This document shows positions 18,300 to 64,000 of a stretch of DNA of 64,000 nt, in pieces; the stretch's first letter is position 1; every line of letters starts with the position of its first letter. Under the pieces are notes generated by a model, which was not told the origin of the DNA, did no database searches, and was given only the letters and a program-made list of their open reading frames with translations. Origin of the DNA: Takakia lepidozioides (lineage: Eukaryota; Plantae; Bryophyta); the NCBI GenBank assembly GCA_030704615.1, contig CM060733.1, positions 65,782,001 through 65,846,000 of the forward strand, written 5' to 3'. Made by a program: the position numbers and the translations under genes.

Positions 18300-21200
18300 T
18301 ACAAGCCATTTCCGTGACATTGTTGTGAGATACGATGGAGGAAATGTATGGAGCTACCAAGGGGCCACGTCGGTACTCTGGAGCTGTGGGCACCATCAAG
18401 CTTGATGATTTCATACAGGAGTTTGATAGTTGGTGTGATTTGCAGCAGATGCGCAATCCACAACTGTTTACGCCTTTTATGGCGTGGAAGGGGCTGTTTT
18501 AGCACCTTGATGGGCCGCCCATGGATGACTACCATTTAAATTTAGGCGGGGACATGAGGTAGAGATTGAGGAATGGCGGGTGTATTGGTCACCTAACTAT
18601 GTCTCCATCACTAGAGGCACAAGGGCAGTGGTGACACTGGCAGCTACACCGGCAGCTTCTGCAAGTAGCAGTGGGATGTCAAGTGGAACAGGAGCTGGGA
18701 AGTCCACCCAAGCTCCTGCTGCAACACCAATACCCATGCCTGCCTTTAACCCAGTTGTGGAGTTCTTCGAGGAGTTAAGGAGAAACTACCAGGGGATAAA
18801 GACGGAGAAATTGCGGAGCTTGCAAAAGTTCCAACGAAAGCCTACCGAGAGGACGAGGCAATGTATTCCAGAGAGGTAGAGGAGGCAGAGGTCGTGGTGG
18901 AGGTCGTAACGAAAACCAAGGACCACAGGGTCAGGGTCAAAGTCATGACCAAGGCATGGTGGATAGGCTTGCCCAGCTAGAGCAACGTCTTGCTACCATG
19001 GCCACTACTCATGTTGCGCCAGCTCCAAGGCCTGAGGTTCAAGCCCCACCTGCACAACCTCCTATGCCTAGGGAAGACCAGATTGGTATGGGCTTCATGT
19101 ATGGAGCCGCACTTGCAGGACCATTGCATGTGGACTCTGCAGCTGCTGTCACTCGAGCAGCAACGCGTGCTCCTGAGCCAAGAGGAGCGGATGTGGATTT
19201 TGATCCCCAAATAGGGGAAGCAAGTCAGCAGACAAGGCTTCCACAGTCTTTCACATTGGCTGAGACAGTGCTAACTATGTCATCGATGACACCCGCTTGC
19301 CCAAGTGTGTCAGAGGTAGAGCCACGAGTGCCATTGGGGAAAGTTGGTATGGCTCGGGAAATGCCAGTGGGTGGTACTGCAAAGCAAGGTGCAGCCAGTA
19401 CATTGTTGGGGGCGGCTACAACAATTTGTCAAGCTCCATTGTTTTCTGCCATGACAATTGCAATGCCGGGGATACGGCCAGCTGCAGTGTTTAGACTGGC
19501 AGCTGCACTCTGTGAGAATGGTGATGCATCGGCACTATCTGCGGGGATAGTGGATCAGGTGCAGTGCATGGATGCCCTGGATTCAAGGGTGAAGACAGCC
19601 ACAACTGCGCCATGGCAAGCAGAAGCTGCAAGGTTGAAGGAGTACTTGCCACCTAGACCAGCCATTGAGCGTAGTATGGTGACTCATGGGGTAGTCATGG
19701 TGGACAATCAGGATGGTGTGTTTCAGTTGGGTGGCCCAGTCGGGAGGAGGTATAGGCCATTGTGGGTCTTGTTGGACTCGGGAGCACAGCCATTGATATT
19801 GGCCGGAGAGCAGCAATTGCAGGCTTGGGCCTTAGAGAGGTGGATTTGGAGTCTTGCCCTTTCCAAATTCAAACATCTTTGGGCGGTTCAGAGAAGGCAC
19901 GAGAGATTACACACCATGAGCTCTTCATTCGATTGCAGCCAGATCATCCTACAGATGGTTCGGCTAAAGCCATTGTTACGGACGCGATGTCTTATGATGT
20001 GCTTGTTGGTGGGGCTGTGTTATACCCGATGGGCTTTACTTTGGACTTTTGGGAGGAAACGGCATCCTACAGGCCGGAATGGCAGTCAGGGGATGGTCGA
20101 CATGCACTACTCCCAGTGCGGTTTATTGGAAATGTAGCGGTGGATCATAGGAACATGATACCCACATTGGCTGCATTCTCATGGGTGGTGGCTTGGGGTG
20201 GTGAGCTCTTGGAGGGCAATAGCCATGCAGATGATAGGCCACCACCTGATGAGGATAAACAATTGGCATACAAGGCTGATCTGCTTCCTCATGTGTCTGT
20301 CCATATTCCACTGTAGGATAAAGTTGGGAATTTGCATCGAATAGCAGGCGAGTGTGTGCATCAAGCATGGCAGGAGGCCTATCCATTGGTGAGTGAGGGG
20401 AGTTCAGTGACATCACCTGGACCTCCTCAGTTAGCTCCTTTGGACACAGTACCCATTACCTAGCAACCACCTGACTCAGGGATTTGTTTGCTAGACCTGT
20501 TTGGAGGCATGAGCACTGGGCTTGCAGGAGTGTTGCAAGTAGGGATTAAAGTACACAAGTACTTGTATGTGGAGAAGGATGAGATAGCTCGGCGTATTTC
20601 TATGCGCCACATTGTCTTGCTCACACATTGGTATCCTGAGTTGTTGTCTCTCTCAACAATTCAAGGGTATCAAAAAGCCTTGCCAGCAGACATTACCTTG
20701 CTGGGGGCGGATGATTTGGACTGGCATGGTGCCATTGACTTGATGATAGCTGGATGGCCTTGCCAAGGACACTCTCCCATAGGTCATGGGAATGGCTTGC
20801 ATGATGCACGATCGCATTTGTTTTGGGAGATGTTGAGAGTGTTGCGTGACTTGCAGACGAGGTAAGTGCAACCTCTAGCCTATATCTTGGAGAATGTTCC
20901 TCTTATGGGGGACTCTCGGGCCAGGGATATGGCCATTGTACATCAGGTGCGGTCTTGGATTGGATCGGCGGTGCTATTGGATGCAGCGGCGGTGGGATCA
21001 CGTACGCATCGACCTCGATTATGGTGGACCAATCTTGCACCACCAGAGCTGTTCAAGAGAGCATACGATTCCATTCAACGGCCACCCAATCTCACAGTTG
21101 AGGGCATTTTGGACCAAGAGAGGCAACCACAGAGGGTGCGTCATGATGACCGTCCACTTTTAGCAGTGGTAAATCAAGTGGGGCAGCCACGTGCGGCCTT

Positions 21201-22092
21201 GCCTACGCTCATGAGCTTTCCCTCGTCTCATGCTTTTCGAGACGATGCTCCTGGGTTGATTTGAGACAGTGTGCTACAGCAATTGGTGGAGCCTAATGCA
21301 GATGAGCGAAAGCAGGCAATGGGATTTGCCACGGGCACTACAGCTATGCCAGAAAGAAAGAGTCATTGGATCTCTCAAGCAGCAATATGAGGAGTGGGGG
21401 GAGCCATACACTGAGGATCAGTTGGAGGCCAAGGTGGCCAATGTCTTTGAAGAGGTTGAGAATGTTTCTTCCCCAGAGGATGTTCTCAAGGTGGCTATGG
21501 CAGAGCAAGTGGAGGCTACGCCACGGTCAGGGTGGGCGGATAAGGCCCAAGAGGTTGCTATCTAGCAACCAAATGATGCGTCTCCTACCTCTAAGCCTGG
21601 TGTACCCAAGGTTGCAGTCACTGAGGACAACTGGGAACCAGATGTTGGACCTACAGTCACCGGAGGAGAGAGATGGAGGATCCAGCGATTTCTAAGGGCT
21701 TATAGAAATTGCTTTGCCTTCGGTTTGAAGGATTTGGGGAGTTTGAAGGACCAGGAGATTCGTATTGATTTGGCAAGTGACACGCCAATTTTTCAAAGGC
21801 CCTACCGGTATAGTGACATGGAGAGGTCATTGATCCAGTCACGGACTATGGAGCTGTTTGAAGCTGGATTGGTGGAGTTGTCAGGCGGGGAGTATGCCTC
21901 GGCAACGGTAATGCCAGCTAAGAAGGATATCTATGGCAATTGGACAAAAAGAAGGATGTGTGGGAACTATCGTCCTGTGAATCGTCATACTAAGTCCGAT
22001 AGATATGTCATGCCAACTCCAGAGGAGATCTTTGATGCCATTGGGCATGCAAAGGTGTTTAGCACATTGGACTTGCGATCCAGTTACCACCA
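18300..22092 (+). mobile_element. Ty3/Gypsy element: gag - aspartic protease - C5 DNA methyltransferase - RT (truncated)
   Basis: Gag-like IKLDDFIQEFDSWC...FFEELRRNYQG; protease VLLDSGAQPLI...YDVLVGG; DNMT at 20480-21350; RT RPYRYS...LDLRSSYH, cut at 22092 by a CACTA end. Confidence 0.88.
20480..21350 (+). pseudogene. Retrotransposon-borne C5 cytosine DNA methyltransferase (DNMT3/DRM-like), interrupted by stops
   Basis: Motif I LDLFGG, II YVEKD, III ADI, IV IDLMIAGWPCQGHS, V RS.LFWE, VI YILENV, VIII HRPRLWWTNL, IX EPNADERKQAMGF..G.T. In-frame stops at 20863 and 21262. Confidence 0.92.
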
Positions 22093-22350
22093 CACTAGAA
22101 GAAAAACGCGGAATAACCACTCTGTTAACCACTCATTTTGAGTGGTAAAAGACACTAAACCACTCTGGCCCCAGAGTGATGAAGAACCAGTGGATTAGGA
22201 CAAGTGAGTGGTAAAAGACATTACGTGGCACCAGTGGTTAAGGACAGTGGTTCGAACCACTCACATCCGGGTCCACCTGTTAGCTGACGTGTCACTGAGA
22301 TAAACAAACCATTTATGACGTGTCACAGTGGTAAACTGACGTGTCATACC
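22093..22350 (+). mobile_element. CACTA element terminus with subterminal repeats
   Basis: CACTAGAAGAAAAACG begins exactly where the RT is cut. Repeated ACCACT/AGTGGT motifs follow. Confidence 0.75.
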
Positions 22351-22419
22351 CGTCTTATAAAATCTAATCCCTACTAAAAAACATAAATATACCCTACTCA
22401 ATTGTTTATATTTTCCTTA

Positions 22420-22940
22420 AGCTTGGGCTACACTATATGCCCATGGGTTGATGTATGTTCAATGAGAAATTGTATAGGTTTTCAAGTTTCTTCAATATTT
22501 GTTTCTCTTGTCATCAACCCTAAAACCTAATTCATGATCATAATCACAACACCCTAGATCCTAAACCCAAATCTACCAATTCAGTTTTTCATATTTCATT
22601 GCAGCCTTGGGTTGATACTTGATACACCATATGGATGGGTATGGGGAATTATAGGTTTTCAAGTTTCTTCAATATCTGTTTCTTTTGCCATAAACCCTCT
22701 TTAAACGTAAGGGCTGTTCCTAATCATTATATACCGTAAACCCTAAAACCTAAATCTACCATATTTAGTATATTCAGCCTTGGGTTACACCATATGGATG
22801 GATATGTTAAATTTTATAGGTTTTCCAGTTTCTCCAATATTTGTTTATCTTGTTTTAAGGTTTAGGGCAAGAGAAACCCTAAACCATAAAATCTAATTCA
22901 TAATCGTAATCCTAAAAAATCGTAATCCCCGTTCCAAATG
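22420..22940. repeat. Three diverged ~175 bp tandem units (AT-rich, AAACCCTAAA-containing)
   Basis: GC(C)TTGGG...ATGG.TG...TATAGGTTTTC(A/C)AGTTTCT.CAATAT.TGTTT recurs at about 22420, 22603 and 22777. Confidence 0.7.
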
Positions 22941-23512
22941 TACTAAGCTTATTTTCAGAAATGAAGTTGAAGTGCTAAAACGTAACACTTGGGCCTCTAC
23001 ATGGGAGAAACACTTGGGCTTAGATTTCAATTCATCACATATAGGCCAATGGCATGTAGGCTACCCTAGATCTCCCAAACTTTAGGGTCTCTGTATACAT
23101 AAGGGATTGCACTTGGACTTAGATTTCAATTCTTCACACATGGGCCTTGACATAGAAAGTGGGCATTCCTAGGATGTCAATGGTGATTTGCTTTAGCTGA
23201 CGCTCAGCAAATGCCTATTCAAAGCCTTGTTTGTACTTCTTCAACCTTGCTTGGAGAATAGCTGATGGTGATTTATGTCTTAGGGTGATACATGTTGGAG
23301 GTAGAACAACCATTGTGCTTTGGATAAGAGAATTAGGAAGGTGGGAGAAGATAAACACCATGGCATGAGAGGTGACATGGGGAGATAGAGCAGAGATGTT
23401 GAGAAATGGACAGTGGGAGTGGTATAGAGGTCAGTATTAGGGCTGTTGCAGGAAAATTTAGGATCAGATTAGGTATTAAACCAGCTTTGAATTCAGATTA
23501 GAGTGTAGAAGA

Positions 23513-25010
23513 ATGACCAGTCCAACTAGCATAGATGTACCTTACCATGGTAGGAATAGTGAAGATGTGAATGACTGGCTGGAGACAAATCAGATGGAGG
23601 CAGATGTTAGGGATTTAAATGAGGATAAAACCTTCAAGGTAGCAAGGCTCAACATGCTGATGAATGGTACCGTAAACAAAACCCTAGACCAGACAATTGG
23701 GAGGATTTCACGGCAGCCATATCAGCCAAGTTTGGTGTCATTGACTTGACAGAAATCAGGCTGAGGATGGATACCATCAAACAGGAAAGTAGACAGAGGG
23801 TTCAAACATATTTTGATAGGTTGAACCGGCTGTTTATAAGAAGTGAGGCGTCTGATTTGGAGCAGAGGCGCAGATTTACAGCGGGTTTGAGACCAGAAAT
23901 AGCAAGAGTAATGCTGGGCAGGCTTCTCTCTGATGTAAAAGAAGCACTTGAAACAGCCATTGAGATTGAGAGGGGTCTGGGAAAATTGGGGGAAATACCT
24001 CTAGAGCCCTTGGAAGGAGATGATACAGATGAGTCAGTTGTGTTTGTCAACCCTGTGGATAGAAGACTTGATCAGCTGAACACTACCCTACAGAAGTACT
24101 TTGATAGGGGACCAGTCATAAGAGAAAGCTCGGGATCTAGGACACCACCTCGTGTTCGTCTTTGTAACACTTGTCATAAAGAGGGTCACATAGCTGCACA
24201 TCGTCCAGAAGGAAGAACCCAAGCTAAGTGTGACAAATGTCACCGGTTTGGGCATTCAACGGAAATATGTGGTGTGAGATGCAACTTCTGCAAGGTACTA
24301 GGGCATACTGAGAATGAGTGCAGTAGAAAACTTGACCAGACTATGATGGGAGCTCCTGGAACTAACTTTGTAGATGTGTTCTATGATGATGAGGACAATG
24401 TACTCGCAGAAATGACAGATCTGATGTCACAAAATAGTATCAACGAGGTTAGGCTTCCAAGGAACCGCATCCCTGTCCCGAGTCCTATTGTTGAACCTGC
24501 AGAGTTACCAGAGAGGAGTGGTGAGAGTAGTGAACAGCCAAACAAGACCAAGAGTGAGATTTACCCAAAAGAACAATTTCAAGGCTGCGTAGAAGGAGGT
24601 ACCAAATCCTAAATCCTGAATCACGTCTACAAGGGGAGAATATCCTTGTCTCCCATGGACCTGATCACGACTGTGCCTGGTACAATTCCAGCTCTGAAGA
24701 TGTTGCCATGCACCTCTTTCCCCTTTTGCAAAACTGCTAGGGCAGTGTTCAGATTGGCATTTGGCACAATTCCAGCTTTGATGATATTCCCATGCACCTC
24801 TTTGCCCTTCTCCAGGGCTGCCAGACTTGCACTGTATGGAACCCCTTTTGTAATCAGAACTGATCACAAACCACTGGAGTGGTTGGCAACGGTAAGTGAC
24901 GCCTATGGATGCAGGGGTAGATGGATCATGATGTTATAGGATTTTGAGTTTAAGATTGTTCATAGGGCGGGTGCTAGGCATGCTAATGTAGATGCATTAA
25001 GCAGGTATCC
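23513..25010 (+). mobile_element. Deleted Gypsy element: gag with three CCHC-type knuckles and an RNase H remnant
   Basis: IKQ...QRVQTYFDRL...FTAGLRPEI; CNTCHKEGH, CDKCHRFGHSTEIC, CNFCKVLGHTENEC; LYGTPFVIRTDHKPLEWL...RW...DFEFKIVHRAG..HANVDALSR. Confidence 0.85.
24677..24831 (-). pseudogene. Captured PPR L-motif fragments inside the Gypsy element
   Basis: The minus strand reads ASLAALEKGKEVHGNIIKAGIVPNANLNTAL / AVLQKGKEVHGNIFRAGIVP, nearly the same as the PPR L motifs at 46-50 kb. Confidence 0.85.
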
Positions 25011-26199
25011 AGTGGGACCAGCGGAGGAAACCGAGGAACTCGAGGTATACTCTACTTCCTTATACAGTCAAAAAAAGGAGGGGAGGGATGGAGCCTATCT
25101 TCTTAAACTAGACTGGGACAGGGGTGCCATCAATGCTTCTCTATTTCAGTATGAAGAGGGTAAGGAAGAGTTGAGAGAAACTAGACATATTTAAGCGCAA
25201 TGTGGACCAAATATGAGCTTGAACCAAGTTCATTCAATGGGTCATTCAAGTGTTGAACGCATCTACGTGTTTTAGAGACGGAAAACTACGTTTCGTTTGC
25301 ACATGATTTTTTTTTAATTCCGCTCTTAAACCATATGCTTAATGACAACATATGTTGCAATGTGCGCACAAATTGAGAGTGAATAAAAGTCATTTGGACC
25401 CAAAACCATATTTTCTTCCCTCATTTGCACTCCAAAGTTGAGTTGTCTTCAACTTCATGAAATCTTCATAAAGAGTTAAGCAAAAGTGAACAAAGAAAAC
25501 ACTTTTTTTTCAACATTTGTTTTTGGTCCAATCTTTTGCACAGATATAGTGGTGTTCACACCACAAAATACAGGAAAAAAATAAATCATTACGTCGCAGA
25601 AATCCCCAATCCTAGAACCCCAGGCGAGAGGGTATTGCGACGCCCTAGCTCGACTGCGACGACGGGAAATCACAACCTCGCCATTGTGGACGGGGGGCCG
25701 TTGCGACTCCGTGGCGACGCAGCCTCCCGGGTGTCAGTACAGTATCTGCAAAATAAATCATTCTTAGATCACGGAATATGAAATCCCTAGACGTAATTTC
25801 CATGTGGATGAAACATTTATGTTCTGGAAATTGGTGGTGAGGATTGGATTTGACGCCCACCAGTTCGCAATCATGGGGTCTGGGACACAAGGAACATGCA
25901 CTCATTTTGGCACAAAGATTGTCAGGCATCACTTTTAATGAGGGAATTGTATGATCATACTCTGAAGTTGGAGAGAAGTCAAGAATTTCTGAGGTGATGA
26001 TGATCTGAGACATCAAGAATTGTAGCTACAACAACCAGTCAACGAATTTGCAGATTACTTCATTACCTACACAGACAATGGTTTGTCTCTCCCTCTTAGT
26101 CATCATGGTTGCCACCTGTGAGAGAGATGATTAGTCACAACCCTTGCTACTTCCAGCTAGTGAAGCTGGTTTGGCACCTTAGCTGGCTCGGCCCTCCCC

Positions 26200-26500
26200 A
26201 CGCACCTAAGTGGGAGAGGGTGTTGTTGCGACTCCCGGAGTCTCCAGCTGACGGCCGGCGTTAGAGCGTTCCGGCGATTCCTGGGCGACGCAACCCCAGT
26301 GCGCTGGCGGGTCATGCCCCAATTCCAGTGACCTAGTGGCAATGCAAGGTGGGGAAAGGTCGCCTGAGCGGCGCCGTTGCGACGCTCTGACGTCGTAATT
26401 CACGGGCCAGGCGCCTGCGCGGCCCTGCAGTCGCAAGGGGGTCGGCGTGTCCGGCGCGCTTGGGGTCCCGCGTTGCTAACCTTCCCTAAATGTAGTAGTG
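26200..26500 (-). mobile_element. CACTA element terminus with TTGCGAC subterminal repeats
   Basis: The reverse complement ending at 26500 reads CACTACTACATTTAGGGAAGG. GTTGCGAC/GTCGCAA repeats occur at 25630-25720 and 26220-26440. It truncates the adjacent LINE. Confidence 0.7.
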
Positions 26501-29500
26501 TTAGTATGACTAGTGGAGGTCGAGGCTTGCTTGCTAGCTTCTCGAGTAAGGGTGGTTTTGAGGTTGCGGATAGGGCGTGGCTCCGTAGGGCCTGGGACGG
26601 GGTGGATGAACCAAAATGGGTTGGTGTGGGCAACATGAATGGGATCCGATGTAGGGTCTACCTCGGGTCGGGTGGCACCTCGTTGGGCGAAGAAGTTAGC
26701 TATATCGTTGCCAGTGATGCCAGTGTTGGAGCGAACTTTTAAAAAGTGGATGGGCTGGTTTATGGAGATAGCTAGACAAACGATGGCAGCGATGAGGTTC
26801 CGGTCTGAATGATAGTGGTGAGAGGAGGGTTGAGAGAGGTGATTACGGATGAGAGAGAGTGAGGTGAGACTATCTGTAAAGATATAGTGAGGTGGGGGGA
26901 ATGATGAGAGATGGGTGAGGGCATCGTGTATGGCCATGAGCTCGGCGCAAAGGATGGTGGCCGGGCCAGGGAGGCGCAGGGAACGCCTTGGTTGGTAGCA
27001 GCATGATAGATACCATATCGAGCTCTGGGGCCTGCAAATGAGGGATCCGTCGGTGTAGTGAGAGTGGGCACGTGGGTATCTGAGAGGAAGATCCTTCTGG
27101 GATATCGGGGGTTTGGTGTGGACAGATATGATAGGGGGGACGGTTGGACGGGTGAACATACGAGACCATGTTTTAGAGCTGTTTATGTTAGGGTAGAGAC
27201 GAGGGGTAGGAGTTTGGGAAGGGGGGATAGGGAATGTGGTGGCATTCGTGTCATGTATATCTATTAGAAGGTGTTTGAGGCGGGATGGGAAGTCGGCGGG
27301 TATAAGGGTATCTACGGTGGTGCGATGGATAAGCAGTATGAGGGTTAGGGCGGGTTCTCGGTGTTTAAGGTATTTGGGGAGGGGCGGGGTGCAGTAATAT
27401 TGGATCTGGTCTGGGTCAATTGCGGCTAAAGGCGTAACCTCAGGGGGAAGCTGGAGGAGGGGGTGCGGGCCATTTGGCAGTTGTTGGTGTGTCAGAAGAA
27501 GGATGGTGGCGGTAGAGGGGGAGGACTCGGCCGCAAGACGAGCCCATTGTAATGCGTCATGCGTGGGAGAACCTTGGGGCGGGTGTGCAAAGCCGCGGCC
27601 AGTCCAGGTATGTTGGGAGGCAAAGCCAATGGCTCCAAATATGCAATCTCGGGGGTGCGAGCTTGAGTATGATGAGAGTATCATAGGGCATGTAAGTGGG
27701 CTTGAGTAATAAGAGCATGTGATTTGAAAAGAGTCTATAGGAAGTGCTAGGATGTCCGGTGGGAGGGTAGTATGGGACTGGGCTAGTGTTAGGCGCTTGA
27801 GGAGGGAGCGAGGTTTTTTGGGGGGGGTATCAATCAGATAGCGGTCCACGAGCCAACAGATTTCTGTAGCAAAGTCTTGCCTAGCTGGTGTGAGCTGGCT
27901 AGGTGGTGGGTTTGAGGTAGAGAATCTGTGCCATAACCAGGTGAGTTTGCTGTTTGGAATGAGTCCGATGTAGCGGCCATGAGAGGCATATAGTTTGGAC
28001 ATACATTTGTCGAGGCGTATTATGGGGGAGGTGTGCAGGATGTCTTTGTCAGGATTACATTCTGTGATGCATACATGTACCTCAGGGGCAGCTAGGGGGT
28101 TATGGACGTATCGGGCGTCTATCGATTGGGTTTGGGAAGTGTGGTGTTGGTGGATATGGGCTAGGTAGTTGGTGTTGGTGGATTTATGAAATGCGGTGAG
28201 GAGGTCAAGGTTGTGGGCCCGGTCACGTCATCATGGGACCCAAAGAGGTCATCATCGGCTTGCCAGGTGTTGTCTTCCGATGGGTACCCAGCCCATTTGC
28301 ATAGGTAGAAAGTATCTAGGCATGTGGCGCCAAATTCATCGATGGTGGTTTGAGTTCTGGTTCCTAAATTAAATAGCTTCGATAATGAAGGCTTCCGAGT
28401 TCTCTGGGTTAATATTTTGCGGATTCGGGGGTGAGGGCGGGCTGGTTGGGGACATCGAGGTATTAGGGGGATGGGTAGGAGTGTGGGGGGTGGTAGAGCC
28501 AGGGGAGGTGGGTATGGTCGGGTTAGATCCGGTCATTTGGGGAGGGGGGGACAGTGAACAGGTGAAGGTTGAAAGGGGGGGTGGTGGTGTTAGTTTGAAA
28601 GGTCTGGGTGGTGGGCTGAGCTTTATGTGTGCCATCATGAGAATAGAAGGGGTGGGCTGTTCTGTATGAGGAAGAAGGTCTTGGTGTTATGGGGGAAAGA
28701 GTTTTGCATGGTAGATCGCATTCAAGAGTACATGAGGGAGTCATGTGGCAGAAAAAGGTTTAGCAGTAGGGACAGATAACAACACGTTTTTTACGTGAAA
28801 TATTTGAGATTGAAATCTTGGGGTGAGAGTAGTATGTAGCCAGAGGCTGTGGTGAGTTGGGCTAGTGTTTTTTTGTGTACTTTTTTTATGGGTCTGGTTA
28901 AAGTAGGCTAATATGGGTGTTTTTTGGCGGGGGGTTGGAGAGTTCCTCGAATCGGAGAGAGATGGACTGTTGAGCCATGCTCGTTCAAGGGGTGAGATGA
29001 TGTATAGGGTAGCCCGTGGGAGGGAGTCGGTTGTATGCTGAGTTCATTTGCGTAGCATGTATTAGAGTTCTAGAGGTGGGAGAGTGGGCTGGCGGCAGGT
29101 TGGGGGTGAAGGGGGGGCAGGGAGTAAAGGCCATTGTATTTATTAGCAGTTACTTGGATCTGAGGAGACCCCTGTATATAAGTCCCAGTCGTCCGGGGTC
29201 ATTGAATGCTTCTTCTAGTTGTGTACCACGGGTGCGGGCATATGAGGTAATTAGTTGGATGCTGCTAATGCCATAACTATCAGTGATTGATGTTGGGTAA
29301 GAGCGTTGGGGGTGCTGGTGGTAGGACCAAAACAAATACGTTTAGTGAGTTGGATAAAATGTTTATCGATTAATTTAATATCGGGAGGAGGAAGGGTGTT
29401 GTGTGAAAAAGATATTGAAATTGTGGAGTTTGAGTACCGATTGAATAATGGAGAGGTTTGGGGCGAATGCCAACTGGAGATTTGAGGAGGGGCATGCTTC

Positions 29501-30372
29501 TGTCAGTCAGTTAGAAATCCAGAGTGGTTTTTTGTAGGTGCCATAGAAGTGATGGAACAAGCTGTATACCTAGGTAGGTATATGGTTCGTCAGGGCCTAG
29601 GAAGGGGAAGTTTTTATTTTGATAGTGGATATGCAGGCTGGTTGTGAGGCAATTGTATAGTGAATTTGCTATGATGGGTGGCTGCGGTAACAGCGCATTT
29701 GTGCAAGCTTAGCTCCATTCCAGACCATTGGTTGAATCGGGATAGTTTGTCGACTTGTGTATTGAGATGCTGATGGCATGGGATAGGATGGCAAGGTCAT
29801 CGGCATATGATGCCGGAGAAATTTCGTTATCAGAAGTTTTGTAGTGGTAGCCTAGTTGGCCATGATCGATCCATCTTAAAAGGGGTTCTAAGAAGATGTA
29901 TAAACGATTGGGCTTAAGGTGTCGCCTTGGATAGTCCCTCTCAGAATTGGAATGGGGGGGGGGGGGTGGAGCCATCGTATGAACCAGCATATTCTGTGGA
30001 GCTGCCAGTATAAATGTTGCCAATGAGTTGAAATGCTATCAGTTGGGTAGCCCAGGTCCGTCATAATGGCGAGGAGACGAGAGTGGTCTATAGAGATATC
30101 TGAAGGCATTTTTAAAGTCGATGTATAGGAGGTAAATGTCTTGTTTAGTGAGTTTGGCGTCTTCTAGTGCAGATAGCACATATTGTATTGGGTGAGTGGT
30201 GCTACGAGTGGCGCGGAAGCCTTACTGGGGGTCGCTAAGAATGCGGTGGCGTTCTCCGTATCTTGAGAGCATCGTAGTTAACATGCTAGTGAAAAGTTTG
30301 TATATGGTGTTAGCTAGGGCTATGAGACAGTAGTTACCGAGATCTGTGGGGTCTCCTTTTTTATATATGAGG
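26501..30372 (-). mobile_element. Non-LTR retrotransposon (Dualen/RandI-like): RT - chromodomain - PCIF1-like MTase - RNase H, degenerate
   Basis: RT: ILIYKKGDP..LGNY..IALANTIYK, GFR, YIDF, RGTIQGD, YADD, YTYLG. Chromo: YLCKWAGYPSEDNTW (about 28240-28395). PCIF1-like at 27490-27960. RNase H: YTDGS, AELMAI, IFTDS, KV...GNDIAN. Confidence 0.85.
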
Positions 30373-30800
30373 ATAGTACGAGTATGTTTCCATGATGGGC
30401 TTTGGCCCAGTCTGGGCATCCCTTAGAGCTCATATGCTGTGGAATTTGTGGAAAGTTAGGTGTGCTTGGGTCTATGATTGCAAAACCCCCAGAGGCAGAT
30501 CGGTATTGTTTCATACATACAATGATCTGTTAACTGAGGGGAGAAAAGCTTGGGGGCCAATTGTGTACAGCTGTTCCCAAAACTACAGAACAACGCTGGA
30601 GAAAGCTACTCCAAGTTTTCGAACAAGTCCGGGGCAAAAGCAACTTGCTCAGCACCCGTCTTCCCAACCTGCATTTTTGATGGCAAGACTCCATCCCCCC
30701 TCAATGGGAAGTCCACTGGTGAAGGGGAGGAGGCCGAGTTCAATTAGCGAGTCCCAAAAAGAGCTTGGGATCGAAAGTTTACAACCCAATTGAAAATTTG
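30373..30800 (+). mobile_element. L1-type LINE ORF2 C-terminal fragment
   Basis: W..LRAHMLWNLWKVRC.WVYD resembles the LWxIWxxRN motif at the end of plant L1 ORF2. Confidence 0.55.
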
Positions 30801-34900: not shown

Positions 34901-37900
34901 TCCATTAAGAGATCAATCAGCTTGTAAGGTCTCAGACGAAATTATACTGGGACAAGTTATACAGTGAAATAAACTCAAAATCACCATGGTGGTAATGACA
35001 AGAGATTCTGGTTGGCTTCAACGTTTGTACAAGCGAAAAAGCGGTCAGCAAGTATAAGCGCTGAATTGAAGACTACTAAAGGTGCAGTGTGACTTCATCG
35101 GTTGACATTGTCAAAAACCTTTGAAACTCACTACAGTATTCTTGGCAGAACTTCTAGGTCTAACAGTGAGGGGTCCTCTGATGAATGGAGGGACACAGTT
35201 GGAAAAACTGTTCCTGTGATTCAAAACAGCCCTGATGAACTGGAGTATTTCAATGGCTTAGAACGCTCCCATTAGTTCTCTGAGATTGTGGAAGCAATGA
35301 TTGAACATTTAAACGGATATAAAGCTGGTGGACCTGATGGCATAGTCAACGAGCTTATCAAGCACGGTGGCGATCCCATGATAGAGGCCCTAGTTCTCGT
35401 CTTTAACCTTATCTGGAAGACTGAACGATCCCCTTTAGCTGGCAACAGGGGGTCATTGTCAATCTATACAAGAAGGGTGACAGAGAAGAACCGGGGAAAA
35501 CTACTGTGGCATCACGCTCCTCAATGCTGTTGGCAAGACATTTTGCAGAGTTATAAGTACTCGTCTCGAGGTTGATCTGGAATCTAGAGGTTGTTTCCAC
35601 GAAGGGCAAGCTGGCTTTCGGCGAAACAGGGGCTGTGTGGATCATATCTTCACTCTAAGCCAGATTATCCAGGGAAGGAAAAAAGAAGGGAAACCCACTT
35701 ATGTTTTTTTCCTGGATGTCAAAAAGGTTTATGACACAGTGTGCAGAGATGGCCTATGGCTCCGCCTCTGGTCTTGTGGGATCAAGGGAAAGATGTGGAG
35801 AGTTGTCCACAACTTGTATGTTCACACCAAAAGCTGTGTCACTGTTAATGGACAGAAGTCCAACTTCTTTGAAATAGACCAAGGTGTAGCTCAAGGCTGT
35901 ACTCTCTCCCCTCTGCTCTTCAATGTTTTCATCAATCAACTCCTCGAGGATGTGGAAAGTGAGGATTTGGGTTAAGGGTGGGTGATACCACCATACCAGC
36001 CCTTATGTTTGCGGATGACTTCGCAGGCATAGGGGAGACTCCAACCAACCTCCAGGAGTTGAGTGATTGCGCGAAGAGATACGTTGATCTTTGGGGGCTA
36101 GAGGCTAATGTCAGCAAGTGTGCAGTGGTAGCATTCAACGACAGAGGAGAGGGAGGAAGTGATCTTAAGTGGCAGTGGAGTAGCCAAGAGATCCCGGTCC
36201 TCCCTTCCTACACTTACCTGGGCGTTGAGTTTTCCTTCAATTGTAATTGGGATGGACATATCCAGAAAGTTGTTCAAACTGGCAAGGGCAAAGCTCTGGG
36301 GCTCACTAAATTTTTCCACTGCAGAGGGGTCAACTCTGAGGTTAAGACAACCATGCTTTGTCGCGTTATTAGACCTGCCTTGGAGTACGGATCTGCTATA
36401 TGGGTTGATAACTCCAACCAGGCTAAGTCTCTTGAATCCATTCAAGTGGGGGTGCTTAAGGAGTGTATGTCAGCATGCTCCAAAACAGCCAATGTGGCTG
36501 TTTGGGGTGAAGTTTGGCATTCCGTCCTTAAGCTCCCAACAAGATGAATTCAAGGTCAGATGGTGGGGTCGGCTGCAACATATGTCCAACACCAGATATC
36601 CTAAGTTAATCGACTCTATATCTTGGAAACAGGACCGCCCTGTCAAACAGGCTAAGTCCTGGCAGAGGGGAGTAGAAGAGATTCTCAAGGACCTGGATCT
36701 GGATCCGCAAGTCTTGATCCTGCTGGATAAATCTGACTTAGAGGCTGTAGTGTCCAAAGCCATGTCTGTTGCCATGAAATTGTCTGACCTCAAGGGTCTA
36801 CCCACTCTCGGCACTAGACTGAAATTTAAACTCAGGGCAGGAAGCCTACCTTTGAACAGCAAACGGAAGCAGAGAGGAAAGGGAGAGTGCAATTGCCCGT
36901 TGTGTGGGCAACCTGAAGACAGTATTCATTGTCTGATACACTGTCCGGGGTTCTCTCACCAAAGAGACGCTCTCTTCAAATCTCTCAAGGGAATTGTGCC
37001 TGTGCCTCTGTTTACCAACTTTGAAAGTCTCGAGGCTGAGCCAAAAGCCCAGGCCCTTCTGAGGCCTAGTTTTTGTGTGAAGGGATTTCTAGAGGATATC
37101 TGGAAAACCCGGATCAATTCTATGTATCAAGGTAAGTCTTACTACCAACGTCAGCCCCTGACAGAGGTAGGTTCTGTCCCTTTGGTTTCCGCTCAAACTG
37201 GGCGCAGGGTCAATGGCCACAAGGCTACGGCAAACAACGTCTTATGAGTACATTCTGTAACCCATTTGACAGTGTAATAATAAAGTGATGGGCATTGTAT
37301 TTGCAGATGTCTCTGGTATCCAGGGTGCAGCACCCTTACATTGTGGAGTACAAGGAGTCCTGGGTGGAGAAGGTAATTGACTTTTCTTCCTGATCTATGC
37401 TTCTAGAGAGTTGGTTATAATTACAGGTGGTTTCATTGATATGGCCAAGCCTGTGCTCCTCCCTGATTTTTTTGTGTTGCTGTCGTTTTCACAGGGGTGC
37501 TATGTTTGCATAGTGACAGGCTACTGTGAAGGTGGTGATATGTAAGTGGAAACCCCAATGCCATTGTCCACTTACGATTGGTTACTCTTTGGCTGTACAA
37601 GGTTTTGTGAAAGGTCGTCAAACTTGTGAGAATGCATTGCCTCTGTCTAGATATGCAACGATTATTCAAGGGATAATGGAGCTTATATCTTTCAGTTTAG
37701 TTCCAGCTCTTGAAGTTTCTGCATTGTATGCACTTTTGGGCTTCTACTGTGGAGCACAGTGAAGAGAACACCTGACAAACTGTGAAAACTGACAGAAAAG
37801 ATCATGCATGGCTAGATTCTCTATTTGGTTACTTGAAAATGTGGTTAGACAATACCTCTTCTTGATTGAGACAAATGAACTGTATCATGTGGGTTGGTTC

Positions 37901-60850: not shown

Positions 60851-61465
60851 AGAGGGGGACGTCTGTACTTGCCCTGTGAGGCGGAGGATTGAAGAGGAAC
60901 CCGGGTACTAAGAGGATTCATGGAGATCCGACAAGAACATTCGGACAGCACCTCGAGGTCCCGTCATGTTGCCGCACAATGTGTCTTCCAGCAGTGGAAG
61001 CCCAAGAGTTTTAAGATCGCCATCGTCTTCAAGCGGGGATTCCGTGTGAGAAATTCCCATCGCCCCTCAAAAGTGAACGAGACACTCTTCTTGTACACTC
61101 TTTTGAATATGGATCCAGGGGACCAGTGAGCTTGGCTTGCGGGCCACAAGACAATGTTACGCCCATCCTTTTCGGAGTTTCAGTTATAGTACAACTGTAC
61201 TGCTGCAAGTACCTCTGACTTTGGCAACAGAAAGGTTCGACTTATGTCTTGCCTACCAGTAACCTATTTTGGTCAAACTAAGATAATACTATGCCATTAA
61301 CTTCTATTTCCACGTGCTTGTATTTTTGTATTTTGGGGGGGTTCTTGTTTTTCTGCTCTCCCAAACTTTGCTTACCTCATTCGACCCCCGGCAAGGAAAT
61401 GCGGCGCCGCATTTCCAAGAGAGAGAGAGAGAATACTCCGGCCAAAGCCGGCGTAACTAAGAGCT

Positions 61466-62470
61466 TTCTCATCCGCAACCATCTCTCTCGCCTATCTTCT
61501 CACCTTCACCACTCTGACCGTAATCTCATCGCAGCCATAGCCAACCTGGCTATCTCCATCAATCAACCCATTCATTTTCTCAAAGTTCGTGCACACAGGC
61601 ATTCGGGGAAACGAGGCTGCCGACCGCCTTGCCCAGGAAGGCGCCGACGAACCCCTTATTGACCCTACCAATGACCCCATACACATAGCGCACACCCACC
61701 CATTCTGGCTAATATACCCTATACCCGACCCCCTTGAACCACGGCCCATACGCAACCTTTTGAAAACCCTCACTCGAGAAGCCAATAAGCAACCTCGGCA
61801 TGTGCTAGCCACACTAAAATATACATACAAAAATGGACACAATCCGCAGTACTCCATAACAAACTCTCAAACTACTTCTGGCAATCCAAAGCAGCTACTG
61901 ACACCCAAATTAAACAGACCCTTAAATTCCGATATGCCATATGGGTCATCGACAACCAGCATGTAGCCCAGTGGTAATGGGCACATACCACGTTGGATGT
62001 GGTTGTGGGTTCAAACCACCGTCTGGTGTGTCATGAAGGTGTCCACCTTCCTGCTGGAAGGCAGTAGCCCTTCGGGGTCAAGTGACACCATAAGTTACGC
62101 TCCCTTCAGGAGGCGTCATACTTTTTACTTTATATGGGTCATCAGCGTAAACACACTTTCTGGCCACGCCTCTTTCCCTCCCCGCATTGTCCCCTCTGCT
62201 CTCATACCCATCAAGAATGTGACACCTGGCCACACCTTCTTAGAAAATGCACTCACCCGGTCATCCACGGGCTTCGGATAACCCGCTATGTAACCACGCA
62301 GTCTGGCACATCCATAAACTCCTCATGAACCGCGCCGAGACCAGATGGTTTTCACTAATTAACGCTGGAACTTACCAAGGACGACCCCCAGACCACACCG
62401 TCCCACACTGGCTTCTCCCCTGTACTTGCTCCCACTCCCCCTGCACCTGCCCCGCTAGACTATGTCCAGA
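61466..62470 (+). mobile_element. 3' fragment of the Dualen/RandI-like LINE family (RNase H end, CCHC, RLE start)
   Basis: Homologous to 26501-26860 (HSDRNLIAAI..LAISINQPIHFLKVR, DPIH.AHT.PFW). Continues CPLC...DTWPHLL..C, GL.ITR..HAV, VPHWLL, RLCPD. Confidence 0.85.
61951..62131 (+). mobile_element. tRNA-derived SINE
   Basis: 12-bp TSD ATATGGGTCATC at 61939-61950 and 62132-62143; Pol III A box TAGCCCAGTGG, B box GGTTCAAACC; T-rich tail TACTTTTTACTTT. Confidence 0.85.
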
Positions 62471-62514
62471 CAGAGAACAGCATGTCCTACTACACATTGA
62501 GGATATGTTCATAC

Positions 62515-62897
62515 AAGTACCTTGAAGGACCAGCCTGCAATTAATCAGATTTCAAGCATGCAACCAAGTAAACTTCTTGGGCATGACAAAACATATTGCA
62601 GCCTCACTCTTTGCCATTTGTAAGTACCCCAAGACATGCATCATGCAAGGCCCCTTGGGTAGGTAAGAACAGCCTGCCATACTACAGATTCAAGACATGT
62701 ATACACAAGCATCTTGATGGACCAGCTTGTAGTTTATTAGATTCCAAACATGCAACCAAGTGACCCTCTTGGGCATGACAAGATAGACTGCAACTTCATT
62801 CTACACCATGTATAATTGCCCCAAGACATGCATCATGTAAGGCATTTTGGCATGGAAGAAAGGCCTGCCATATTACAGATTCAAGATATGGACACAA
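62515..62897. repeat. Two diverged ~190 bp tandem units
   Basis: GGACCAGC.TG...CATGCAACCAAGT...CTTGGGCATGACAA...CCCCAAGACATGCATCATG.AAGGC...GCCTGCCATA.TACAGATTCAAGA occurs twice. Confidence 0.8.
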
Positions 62898-63209
62898 AAA
62901 AACTTTGAGTGCTCGAGACCAAGCCCACTTGGCCAAAAAAATTAAATCATACATTGCAGGTGCCTGGTCTGATGGCAAAATAAGGCAAACCATGGTAGGC
63001 AATGAAGTGGAGTGTGAGCAGTTGGTGTGGCCTTCGCAGGTTCCACCTGGATGACCTCTTCTTTTCAGCATCTATTTGTGGCGAAGAGGGACGGTCCCCA
63101 TTTGGTGGGGAGCTGAGATCAAGTCTAGCGTTGCAGAAGCAGAAATATACATGTCAGAACAGACCCTATTTTGGCGCAACAACTTATTATCTAGGCTATT
63201 TCGTCACTA

Positions 63210-64000
63210 TGGTGCATGGTTGCATTGCCAAAGCTGAAAATGTACCAAATGTAATTCTGAACAACACCCTTGCACAACAAGGGAGCGGGATGGAGGCTTT
63301 GGAGACCTATGGGCAAATGATTTGCGAAGCGGTGAAGCCCAACCACATAACGTTTGTTTGCATTTGCAATGCGTGTGCAAGCCTGATAGCCCTGGAAACG
63401 TGCAAAGAGGTCCATGGTGACATCGTCAAATTTGGAATTGTACCCGATGTCATTCTGAACACTGCCCTGGTGGACATGCATATCAAATGTAGGTGCATCG
63501 AGGATGCCAAGGGAGTCTTTGACAGTATGGCTGAACGAAACGAAATGTGGTGTTGTGGAGTAAGATGATTGCACGACATGCTCAGCAAGGGTGCAGGATG
63601 GAGCCTTTGGAGACCTATGAGCAAATGATGTGCGAAGGGGTGTGCGTTTGCAGTGCGTGTGCAAGCCTGGCAACCCTAGAAAAGGGCAAAGAGGTGCATG
63701 GTTGCATCGCTAAAGTTGGTGTTGTACCAGATGTGAACAATACCCTCGTGGACATGTATGCCAACTATGGGAGCATTGAGGATGCCGAGGGAGTGTTCAA
63801 CAATATGGCTGAACGAGATTTGGTGTCCTGGAACGCCATGCTTGCAGGATATGCATAGCAGGGGCGCGGGATGGAGGCCTTGGAGACCTATGAGCAAATG
63901 ATGGGGAAGGGGTGAAGTGCAACCACATCACATTTGTGTGCGTTTGCAATGCTTGTGCAAGCCTGGCAGCCCTGGAAAAGGGCAAAGAGGTGCATGGTGA
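63210..64000 (+). pseudogene. PLS PPR pseudogene running off the window end
   Basis: P-L-S triplets very similar to 48990-49850, with frameshifts and stops. Confidence 0.88.

What the first reader, a model, noticed from the sequence alone, without database searches (positions are those of the whole stretch)
27490..27960. Non-LTR retrotransposon carrying a PCIF1/CAPAM-like adenine methyltransferase domain
Seen: between the chromodomain and RNase H, the minus-strand ORF reads KLTWLWHRF...FATEICWLVDRY...TTLPPDILAL.IDSFQI...YSSPLTC...YSSSHPRDCIFGAIG...WTGRGFAHPP...ESSPSTATILLL. Knowledge: this follows, motif by motif, my recollection of the PCIF1 cap-m6Am methyltransferase core (KLWLLY; WCLLRRY; LP..VF..L...F; FASPLNC; YCS.FPD.D.YFGS.G; GSFEANPPF; SFIVF.P). 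Inference: the family may methylate the cap of its own RNA or adenines in its cDNA. The catalytic NPPF reads HPPQ here, so this copy or the family may be inactive. I know of no described land-plant LINE with RT + chromo + PCIF1-like + RNase H + RLE.
Basis: partly seen in the sequence, partly recalled or inferred. Interest (0 to 1): 0.9.

Follow-up and report, generated by a model that had tools for sequence, protein, structure and literature searches.

The report
PCIF1-like pseudo-methyltransferase inside plant LINE
A dead copy of a dual-endonuclease (Dualen-type) jumping gene carries a true relative of the mRNA-cap adenine methyltransferase PCIF1. The two residues that do the chemistry are replaced, yet the domain is still kept by selection in the family, so it probably binds rather than methylates.

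Summary
The minus-strand ORF 26476..28002 begins with a ~247-residue domain homologous to the PCIF1/CAPAM methyltransferase lobe.
- The window sequence alone hits Pfam PF12237 only weakly (E 1.4e-3, below cut-off).
- It has 215 database homologs, and several of these pass the cut-off.
- The family profile hits PCIF1 crystal structures (E 2e-9).
- An AlphaFold model (pLDDT 90) matches human PCIF1 residues 426-668 at Z 18.8; the next fold scores 8.7.

The domain is a fixed part of a LINE family. Full-length relatives read APE - RT - chromo or PHD - PCIF1-like - RNase H - CCHC/RLE, which is the Dualen/RandI layout. The window copy (~26,480-30,500) is truncated at both ends and frameshifted. It has no APE and no RLE.

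The catalytic NPPF reads HPPQ here. His replaces Asn in 82 of 118 homologs, and the window's whole clade lacks Asn. The domain still evolves at dN/dS ~0.17 in that clade, so a non-catalytic binding role is most likely. A separate sub-lineage keeps a conserved NPEY motif and may be active.

The nearest published precedent is the inactive PCIF1-clade domain of DIRS1 retrotransposons. I found no paper describing such a domain in LINEs. This scan had already found and followed up the same family on other pieces of this genome (s1-459068, s1-451604, s1-446188), with the same conclusion.

The parts
26480..30500 (-). Truncated, frameshifted copy of a Dualen-type LINE. It keeps the RT, chromodomain, PCIF1-like domain and RNase H. 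The APE at the 5' side and the CCHC/RLE at the 3' side are missing.
   Evidence: A block of strong strand asymmetry (GC skew +0.3 to +0.7 on the + strand) runs from about 26,480 to 30,500. The full-length relatives P0160 and P0169 align colinearly by tblastn. 788 DNA contigs of the same organism match this stretch at 80% identity or more.
29559..30413 (-). LINE-type reverse transcriptase, broken by stops and frameshifts. It contains the YADD motif.
   Evidence: tblastn of P0169 aa 1569-1881 (its Pfam RVT_1 region, E 1.8e-25) onto the window gives E 7e-20. The three-frame translation shows the breaks.
28239..28328 (-). Chromodomain, in a different reading frame from ORF 26476..28002. The frameshift lies near 28,225.
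   Evidence: Pfam PF00385 E 3.3e-7, 30.5 bits against a cut-off of 25.1. P0001 aligns in two frames on either side of about 28,225. Other family contigs differ by a one-base indel at 28,226.
27262..28002 (-). PCIF1/CAPAM-like methyltransferase-fold domain (aa 1-247 of the ORF).
27694..27705 (-). SSPL, which aligns with PCIF1's FASPLN (the motif I region).
   Evidence: HMM alignment to 6irx and 6irv. Motif counts across homologs.
27574..27588 (-). AHPPQ, the equivalent of PCIF1's catalytic ANPPF. Asn is replaced by His and Phe by Gln.
   Evidence: HMM alignment. Residue counts at these positions across 118 homologs.
26674..27063 (-). RNase H domain (aa 314-443 of the ORF).
   Evidence: Pfam PF00075 E 1e-7, 32.6 bits against a cut-off of 25.8.
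61450..62573 (+). Second, partial copy of a related element. It holds the RNase H C-terminus followed by the CCHC zinc finger and the restriction-like endonuclease region.
   Evidence: tblastn of the window ORF and of P0003, P0151 and P0011. The translation shows the CPLC...H....C pattern.

Best explanation
The stretch encodes a domain descended from the C-terminal Rossmann (methyltransferase) lobe of the cap-specific adenosine N6-methyltransferase PCIF1/CAPAM. The domain is built into the single polyprotein of a dual-endonuclease LINE family of Dualen/RandI type. The family order is APE - RT - chromatin reader (chromodomain here, PHD in other lineages) - PCIF1-like - RNase H - CCHC/RLE. These points are shown: the homology, the fold, the fixed position in the family, the loss of the catalytic Asn and aromatic residue in this clade, and purifying selection on the domain. 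One point is inferred. In this clade the domain works as a non-catalytic binding module of the retrotransposition complex. It may hold an adenine nucleotide, the element's own RNA, or SAM. It no longer transfers methyl groups. The neighbouring chromo or PHD reader probably steers integration to particular chromatin. The copy in this window is a dead fragment: it is truncated at both ends and frameshifted, and it does nothing itself.
For: Homology. phmmer of aa 1-253 finds 215 proteins at E <= 1e-3 and 62 at E <= 1e-10. The relatives P0087, P0148 and P0100 pass the Pfam PF12237 cut-off with 48.1, 45.9 and 31.7 bits against 31.1. The family profile hits PCIF1 structures 6irx (E 2.1e-9) and 6irv (E 2e-7), with FASPLN, D..FG and ANPP aligned. 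The AF2 model has pLDDT 90. The top six Foldseek hits are all PCIF1 (E 8e-10 to 1e-6) and the next hit is at E 1e-2. VIA-align gives Z 18.8 over 221 residues to human PCIF1 426-668, against Z 8.7 for the next fold. The Atlas feature search and the Atlas shape search both point to PCIF1_WW clusters.

Fixed part of a LINE. P0160 is one 3467-aa ORF with APE, RVT_1, PHD and PCIF1_WW. P0169 has APE, RVT_1 and RNase H. Both are colinear with the window. The C-termini of relatives carry CCHC, RHN and PD...ExK motifs. 788 genomic contigs of the organism match the element, including the domain.

Inactivity. Asn is replaced by His in 82 of 118 homologs, and the Phe position is variable. The window's 28-member clade has no Asn. 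NPPF to APPA or SPPG abolishes PCIF1 activity (bioRxiv 10.1101/485862).

Selection. dN/dS is 0.17-0.18 over 224-239 domain codons in three clade members. Six columns are at least 90% conserved at 26% mean identity.
Against: No biochemical data exist. His is strongly conserved, which could mean a changed chemistry rather than lost chemistry. The motif I-like SSPL and the D..FG motif are retained, so SAM binding may persist. dS is above 1, which is near saturation, and the strands are compositionally skewed, so the dN/dS value is approximate. The binding-module role is an inference by analogy with the proposal for DIRS1 (PMC4738411). The RT was not placed on a reference LINE phylogeny. 'Dualen-type' therefore rests on domain architecture alone.
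Confidence: 0.72

Rival explanations
1. The HPP-type domain is an active methyltransferase with a non-canonical motif IV. It would methylate the element's own RNA (the cap-adjacent A) or its cDNA.
For: The motif I-like SSPL, the D..FG motif and the W.G.G motif are conserved. His is conserved in 82 of 118 homologs. The domain is under purifying selection. Many relatives keep a Trp at the position of PCIF1's cap-contacting W588, in an LPxW or xNW context (residue role from PMC13290413).
Against: Both residues shown to be essential in PCIF1 are replaced (10.1101/485862). The aromatic position is not conserved in the family: N, D, T, Y and H all occur. Clade members carry F or Y instead of H at the Asn position. 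The helical cap-binding domain is absent. I know of no N6-methyltransferase with an HPP motif (my own knowledge).
Confidence: 0.12
2. The domain belongs to a DIRS-type (tyrosine-recombinase) retrotransposon, the class already known to carry a PCIF1-clade domain, and not to a LINE.
For: DIRS1 elements carry an inactive PCIF1-derived domain next to RT and RNase H (PMC4738411).
Against: The RT shows LINE-type motifs. It is colinear with single ORFs that also encode an APE and a CCHC/RLE. The order is MT then RNase H, not RT-RH-MT. No tyrosine recombinase was seen among the Pfam hits.
Confidence: 0.02
3. The similarity is due to chance, or this one copy captured a host PCIF1 exon.
For: The window sequence alone scores below the Pfam cut-off: 18.7 bits against 31.1.
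Against: Profile, fold and language-model searches all converge on PCIF1. The domain sits at the same place in hundreds of homologs and in many genomic contigs of the organism.
Confidence: 0.01

Closest known systems
PCIF1 / CAPAM, the cap-specific mRNA (2'-O-methyladenosine-N6-)-methyltransferase (Pfam PF12237; PDB 6IRV-6IS0)
   Same: It has the same fold as the C-terminal MTase lobe (human residues 426-668, Z 18.8). The FASPLN-like, D..FG and (A)xPP motifs occur in the same order. Many relatives keep a Trp at the place of the cap-contacting W588.
   Different: NPPF reads HPPQ here (HPx in the clade). There is no helical cap-binding domain and no WW domain. The domain is embedded in a retrotransposon polyprotein between a chromodomain and RNase H.
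The 'MT' domain of DIRS1-type tyrosine-recombinase retrotransposons, assigned to the PCIF1 clade and judged inactive (Iyer et al. 2016, PMC4738411)
   Same: It is a PCIF1-derived domain inside a retroelement polyprotein. Its catalytic residues are substituted and it is presumed to bind rather than methylate.
   Different: The host element is a LINE with APE and RLE, not a tyrosine-recombinase element. The domain lies upstream of RNase H and follows a chromo or PHD reader.
Dualen / RandI LINEs (Kojima & Fujiwara 2005, as described in PMC5029228 and PMC4640811)
   Same: Relatives show APE + RT + RNase H + CCHC + RLE in one ORF. Accessory domains vary between lineages; for example, cryptophyte Dualen elements carry SET and C48 peptidase domains.
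   Different: I found no PCIF1-like domain or chromodomain/PHD reported for Dualen in the searchable literature.
Chromoviruses (Ty3/gypsy elements with a chromodomain in the integrase)
   Same: A retroelement protein carries a chromodomain, which probably targets integration to marked chromatin.
   Different: They are a different element class. There the chromodomain is at the integrase C-terminus. Here it lies between the RT and the PCIF1-like domain of a LINE.

Membership tests
PCIF1/CAPAM methyltransferase family (PF12237) | Significant profile match to the family model | tested here: met
   The window alone scores 18.7 bits, below the 31.1 cut-off. Its homologs P0087, P0148 and P0100 pass it. 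The family profile hits PCIF1 PDB sequences at E 2e-9.
PCIF1/CAPAM methyltransferase family (PF12237) | PCIF1-type Rossmann MTase fold | tested here: met
   The model has pLDDT 90. Foldseek gives E 8e-10 and TM 0.68. VIA-align gives Z 18.8 against 8.7 for the next fold.
PCIF1/CAPAM methyltransferase family (PF12237) | Catalytic NPPF motif (N553 and F556 are essential) | tested here: not met
   The motif reads HPPQ in the window. H occupies the Asn position in 82 of 118 homologs, and the Phe position is variable. This makes the domain a homolog, not a functional member.
PCIF1/CAPAM methyltransferase family (PF12237) | Helical domain that forms the m7G-cap pocket, and an N-terminal WW domain | tested here: not met
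   The structural match covers only PCIF1 residues 426-668. A chromodomain and a linker lie upstream. There is no WW hit.
PCIF1/CAPAM methyltransferase family (PF12237) | SAM binding | not testable with these tools
   The motif I-like SSPL and the D..FG motif are conserved. SAM-contact residues were not mapped, and no binding can be measured here.
Dualen/RandI LINE | Both an APE and a restriction-like endonuclease in one element | tested here: inconclusive
   The feature is met in the full-length relatives P0160 and P0169, which have an APE by Pfam and CCHC/RHN/PD..ExK motifs. The window copy itself has lost both ends.
Dualen/RandI LINE | LINE-type RT followed by RNase H | tested here: met
   The RT at 29,559-30,413 matches P0169's RVT_1 region. 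RNase H scores Pfam E 1e-7.
Dualen/RandI LINE | RT phylogeny within the Dualen group | not tested
DIRS1-type retrotransposon | Tyrosine recombinase and the RT-RH-MT domain order | tested here: not met
   No recombinase appeared in the Pfam scans. The order here is RT-chromo-MT-RH, with APE and RLE in relatives.

The most novel reading that the evidence does not exclude
The family has two states. In one sub-lineage of these LINEs the motif reads N-P-E-Y and is conserved across deeply diverged members: 16 of 17 Asn-bearing sequences, including the RT-containing ORFs P0186 and P0188 and the CCHC/RLE-containing P0087. These members also keep FASPLN and an LPxW Trp. They could be active adenine N6-methyltransferases encoded by a retrotransposon, marking the element's own RNA or cDNA. 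The land-plant-type HPP clade that includes this window would then be a pseudoenzyme derived from them and kept for binding.
Probability: 0.3. Interest if true: 0.8.

Novelty: new variant of a known kind. Interest (0 to 1): 0.55.

Why it matters
Retroelements rarely carry nucleic-acid-modifying domains. A PCIF1-derived module maintained by selection in a LINE, next to a histone-mark reader, suggests these elements use epitranscriptome or chromatin machinery for RNA handling or for choosing targets. It extends the DIRS1 precedent to a second, unrelated class of retrotransposon. It also raises a question: was the domain captured once and passed between elements, or captured twice from the host? 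The NPEY sub-lineage offers a directly testable candidate for a retrotransposon-encoded active adenine methyltransferase. For genome annotation, PF12237 hits in plant genomes should be checked for a LINE origin before they are called PCIF1 genes.

Tried and rejected
- phmmer of the domain alone against PDB sequences found nothing. Only the family profile reached PCIF1.
- The three word-seeded protein searches returned only LINE relatives. They returned no cellular PCIF1 and no DIRS element. I therefore could not root the domain tree or compare with DIRS1 MT domains directly.
- The tree is the quick version, rooted at the midpoint for drawing only. I draw no direction of change (NPEY to HPP or the reverse) from it.
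- The sequencing-run search found the stretch only in DNA runs.
- Two runs guessed to be RNA gave only 40-135-base patches at 80-90% identity. This is no evidence of expression, and it is not evidence of silence either.
- The source organism is coded ('organism A'), and the contig records gave no taxon. The 'land plant' label is therefore not verified by me.
- Kojima & Fujiwara 2005 could not be read.
- I built no family consensus. The database homologs answered the question of whether HPP is family-wide.
- Chance similarity, exon capture by a single copy, and a DIRS-type element were considered and rejected (see rival explanations).

Full report
**What is in the sequence**

Pfam finds RNase H at aa 314-443 (E 1e-7). 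It also finds a sub-threshold PCIF1_WW (PF12237) match at aa 42-142: E 1.4e-3, 18.7 bits against a cut-off of 31.1. A chromodomain lies upstream in another frame at 28,239-28,328 (PF00385, E 3.3e-7, above the cut-off). Pieces of a LINE-type RT, including YADD, lie further upstream at 29,559-30,413 and are broken by stops and frameshifts.

A block of extreme strand asymmetry delimits the copy at about 26,480-30,500. GC skew on the + strand is +0.3 to +0.7 there, meaning the coding strand is poor in G.

**Is the PCIF1 resemblance real?**

Yes. Four largely independent lines agree.
1. An exhaustive phmmer search with aa 1-253 against 1.84 billion representative proteins gives 215 hits at E <= 1e-3 and 62 at E <= 1e-10. 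The long hits P0087, P0148 and P0100 match PF12237 above Pfam's own cut-off (48.1, 45.9 and 31.7 bits), next to RNase H.
2. A profile of 46 such domains (alignment A1) hits the PCIF1/CAPAM crystal-structure sequences. Zebrafish 6irx scores E 2.1e-9 and human 6irv scores E 2e-7.
3. The AlphaFold2 model of the window's own sequence is confident (pLDDT 90, pTM 0.86).
   - Its six best Foldseek matches in the PDB are all PCIF1/CAPAM (E 8e-10 to 1e-6). Other Rossmann methyltransferases follow at E about 1e-2.
   - VIA-align gives Z 18.8 (221 residues, rmsd 3.7) to human PCIF1 residues 426-668. KsgA, the next fold, scores Z 8.7.
   - The ESM-Atlas shape search again puts PCIF1 clusters first, at TM 0.77 and 0.75.
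4. The language-model feature search returns PCIF1_WW clusters for 29 of 30 hits.

The match covers only the C-terminal MTase lobe of PCIF1. The helical domain that forms the cap pocket and the WW domain are absent.

**What element is it part of?**

Two database relatives are single long ORFs.
- P0160 (3467 aa) has Exo_endo_phos (APE) at 819-1059, RVT_1 at 1472-1717, PHD at 2321-2368 and PCIF1_WW at 2546-2667.
- P0169 (3192 aa) has APE, RVT_1 and RNase H.

Both align colinearly with the window. The RT lies at 30,413-29,559, the PCIF1-like domain at 28,002-27,493 and RNase H at 27,087-26,530. The C-termini of these and other relatives carry a CCHC finger followed by RHN and PD...ExK motifs, which is an R2-type restriction-like endonuclease.

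An APE plus an RLE in one LINE is the defining trait of Dualen/RandI (PMC5029228; PMC4640811). The family architecture is therefore APE - RT - (chromo or PHD) - PCIF1-like - RNase H - CCHC/RLE.

The window copy lacks the APE, because it is 5'-truncated at about 30,500. It also lacks the CCHC/RLE, because family similarity stops at about 26,530. It has a frameshift near 28,225 between the chromodomain and the ORF. Other family contigs differ there by a one-base indel. The copy is dead.

A second partial copy at 61,450-62,573 (+) keeps the RNase H C-terminus and the CCHC/RLE part.

Contigs of a DNA run of the same organism match the element 788 times at 80% identity or more, and the matches include the PCIF1-like region. 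This is a high-copy family in which the domain is standard.

**Is it catalytically competent?**

The PCIF1 catalytic loop NPPF aligns with HPPQ in the window (27,574-27,588). Mutating N553 and F556 (to APPA or SPPG) abolishes PCIF1 activity (bioRxiv 10.1101/485862).

Among 118 homologs with the region aligned, the Asn position is H in 82, Y in 10, N in 8 and F in 6. The Phe position is variable, with N, D, T, Y and H all occurring.

On a quick maximum-likelihood tree, the window sits in a well-supported clade of 28 sequences (SH-aLRT 99). None of them has Asn.

The window copy has also lost a Trp that many relatives keep in an LPxW or xNW context. That Trp aligns with PCIF1's cap-contacting W588 (residue role from PMC13290413).

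The motif I-like SSPL, the near-invariant D119, F122 and G123 (D..FG), and W133/G135 are all conserved.

**Is the domain maintained?**

Three members of the window's clade have DNA available: P0174, P0175 and P0176 on loci L002-L004. They differ at about 31% of domain residues. Their dN/dS over 224-239 domain codons is 0.17-0.18 (dN about 0.2, dS about 1.1-1.35). dS is near saturation and the strands are skewed, so the figure is rough. It is still far below 1.

Persistence of the domain at the same position across very divergent LINE lineages points the same way: the domain is under purifying selection although the catalytic residues are gone.

**Most likely mechanism**

Shown:
- The domain is PCIF1-derived and a fixed part of a Dualen-type LINE polyprotein.
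- The canonical N6-methyltransferase catalytic residues are lost in this clade.
- Selection retains the domain.

Inferred: it acts as a non-catalytic binding module in the retrotransposition complex. It may bind an adenine nucleotide, the element's RNA, or SAM. This is the role Iyer et al. proposed for the inactive PCIF1-clade domain of DIRS1 retrotransposons (PMC4738411).

A chromodomain (here) or a PHD finger (in other lineages) sits immediately upstream. That suggests a reader module that directs the complex to marked chromatin. Dualen LINEs are reported to be enriched in Chlamydomonas centromeric regions (PMC9940879), which is compatible with this idea but does not test it.

**A second state of the family**

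Seventeen of 79 near-full-length domains keep Asn, and 16 of them read N-P-E-Y. They cluster on the tree: 4 changes are needed against 15.3 expected under shuffling. They occur in ORFs that also hold RT, RNase H, PHD or CCHC/RLE, such as P0186, P0188 and P0087. They also keep FASPLN and LPxW.

From my own knowledge, adenine methyltransferases of the KsgA/Erm type use N-[LI]-P-Y, so a deviation in the middle of the motif need not abolish activity. These members are candidates for an active retrotransposon-encoded adenine methyltransferase. The tree is unrooted, so I do not claim which state is ancestral.

**Comparison with what is known, and novelty**

PCIF1-clade domains in retroelements are known for DIRS1 (PMC4738411). 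Dualen LINEs are known to carry variable accessory domains, such as SET and C48 peptidase in cryptophytes (PMC5029228).

Searches of the open literature found no description of a PCIF1-like domain, or of a chromodomain or PHD finger, in Dualen or any other LINE. I class the finding as a new variant of a known kind.

This scan had already noted the same family many times in this genome. Three follow-ups on other pieces (s1-459068, s1-451604 and s1-446188) reached the same reading. I re-derived each point independently here.

**Limits**
- There are no expression data.
- There was no direct comparison with DIRS1 MT domains or with cellular PCIF1 on a tree.
- The SAM-contact residues were not mapped.

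Noticed in passing
window 61,450-62,573 (+): A second, partial copy of a related Dualen-type element. It holds the RNase H C-terminus (61-75% aa identity to the first copy over about 130 aa), then a CCHC finger and a restriction-like endonuclease region matching P0003, P0151 and P0011.
   Followed up: partly
window 35,285-35,972 (+): Another LINE RT fragment. It matches the RT of the same full-length relatives, P0160 and P0169 (tblastn E about 1e-14 and 6e-10). It is probably a third fragment of the family or of a sister family.
   Followed up: no
window 26,480-30,500: There is extreme strand asymmetry over the whole element: GC skew up to +0.72 on the + strand, meaning the coding strand is very poor in G. 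The asymmetry marks the element's borders sharply. Database relatives have a similarly skewed amino-acid make-up, rich in P, T, H, N and S, so it is a family trait.
   Followed up: partly
window 26,100-26,500: A G+C-rich stretch (60-65%) with no skew lies directly 3' of the point where similarity to the LINE family stops. Its origin is unknown. It may be whatever replaced or interrupted the CCHC/RLE end of the copy.
   Followed up: no
window 21,725-24,612 (+): Ty3/gypsy-like pieces: an RT fragment at 21,725-22,141 and a gag-like ORF with CCHC zinc knuckles at 23,746-24,612. They lie next to the stretch at 20,480-21,350 that another first-stage note (s1-467555) reads as a gypsy element with a C5 DNA methyltransferase.
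   Followed up: no
window 63,100-64,000 (+): PPR-like repeats are visible in the translation, for example ...VSWNAMLAGYA.QGRGMEALETYEQM... This agrees with another first-stage note (s1-481902) about a PLS/DYW repeat family at the window's edge.
   Followed up: no
proteins P0087, P0101, P0182-P0190 (database relatives); locus L001 8001-10817: A sub-lineage of these LINEs keeps a conserved NPEY motif, FASPLN and LPxW in the PCIF1-like domain. It may therefore be catalytically active, and several members lie on contigs longer than 100 kb.
   Followed up: partly
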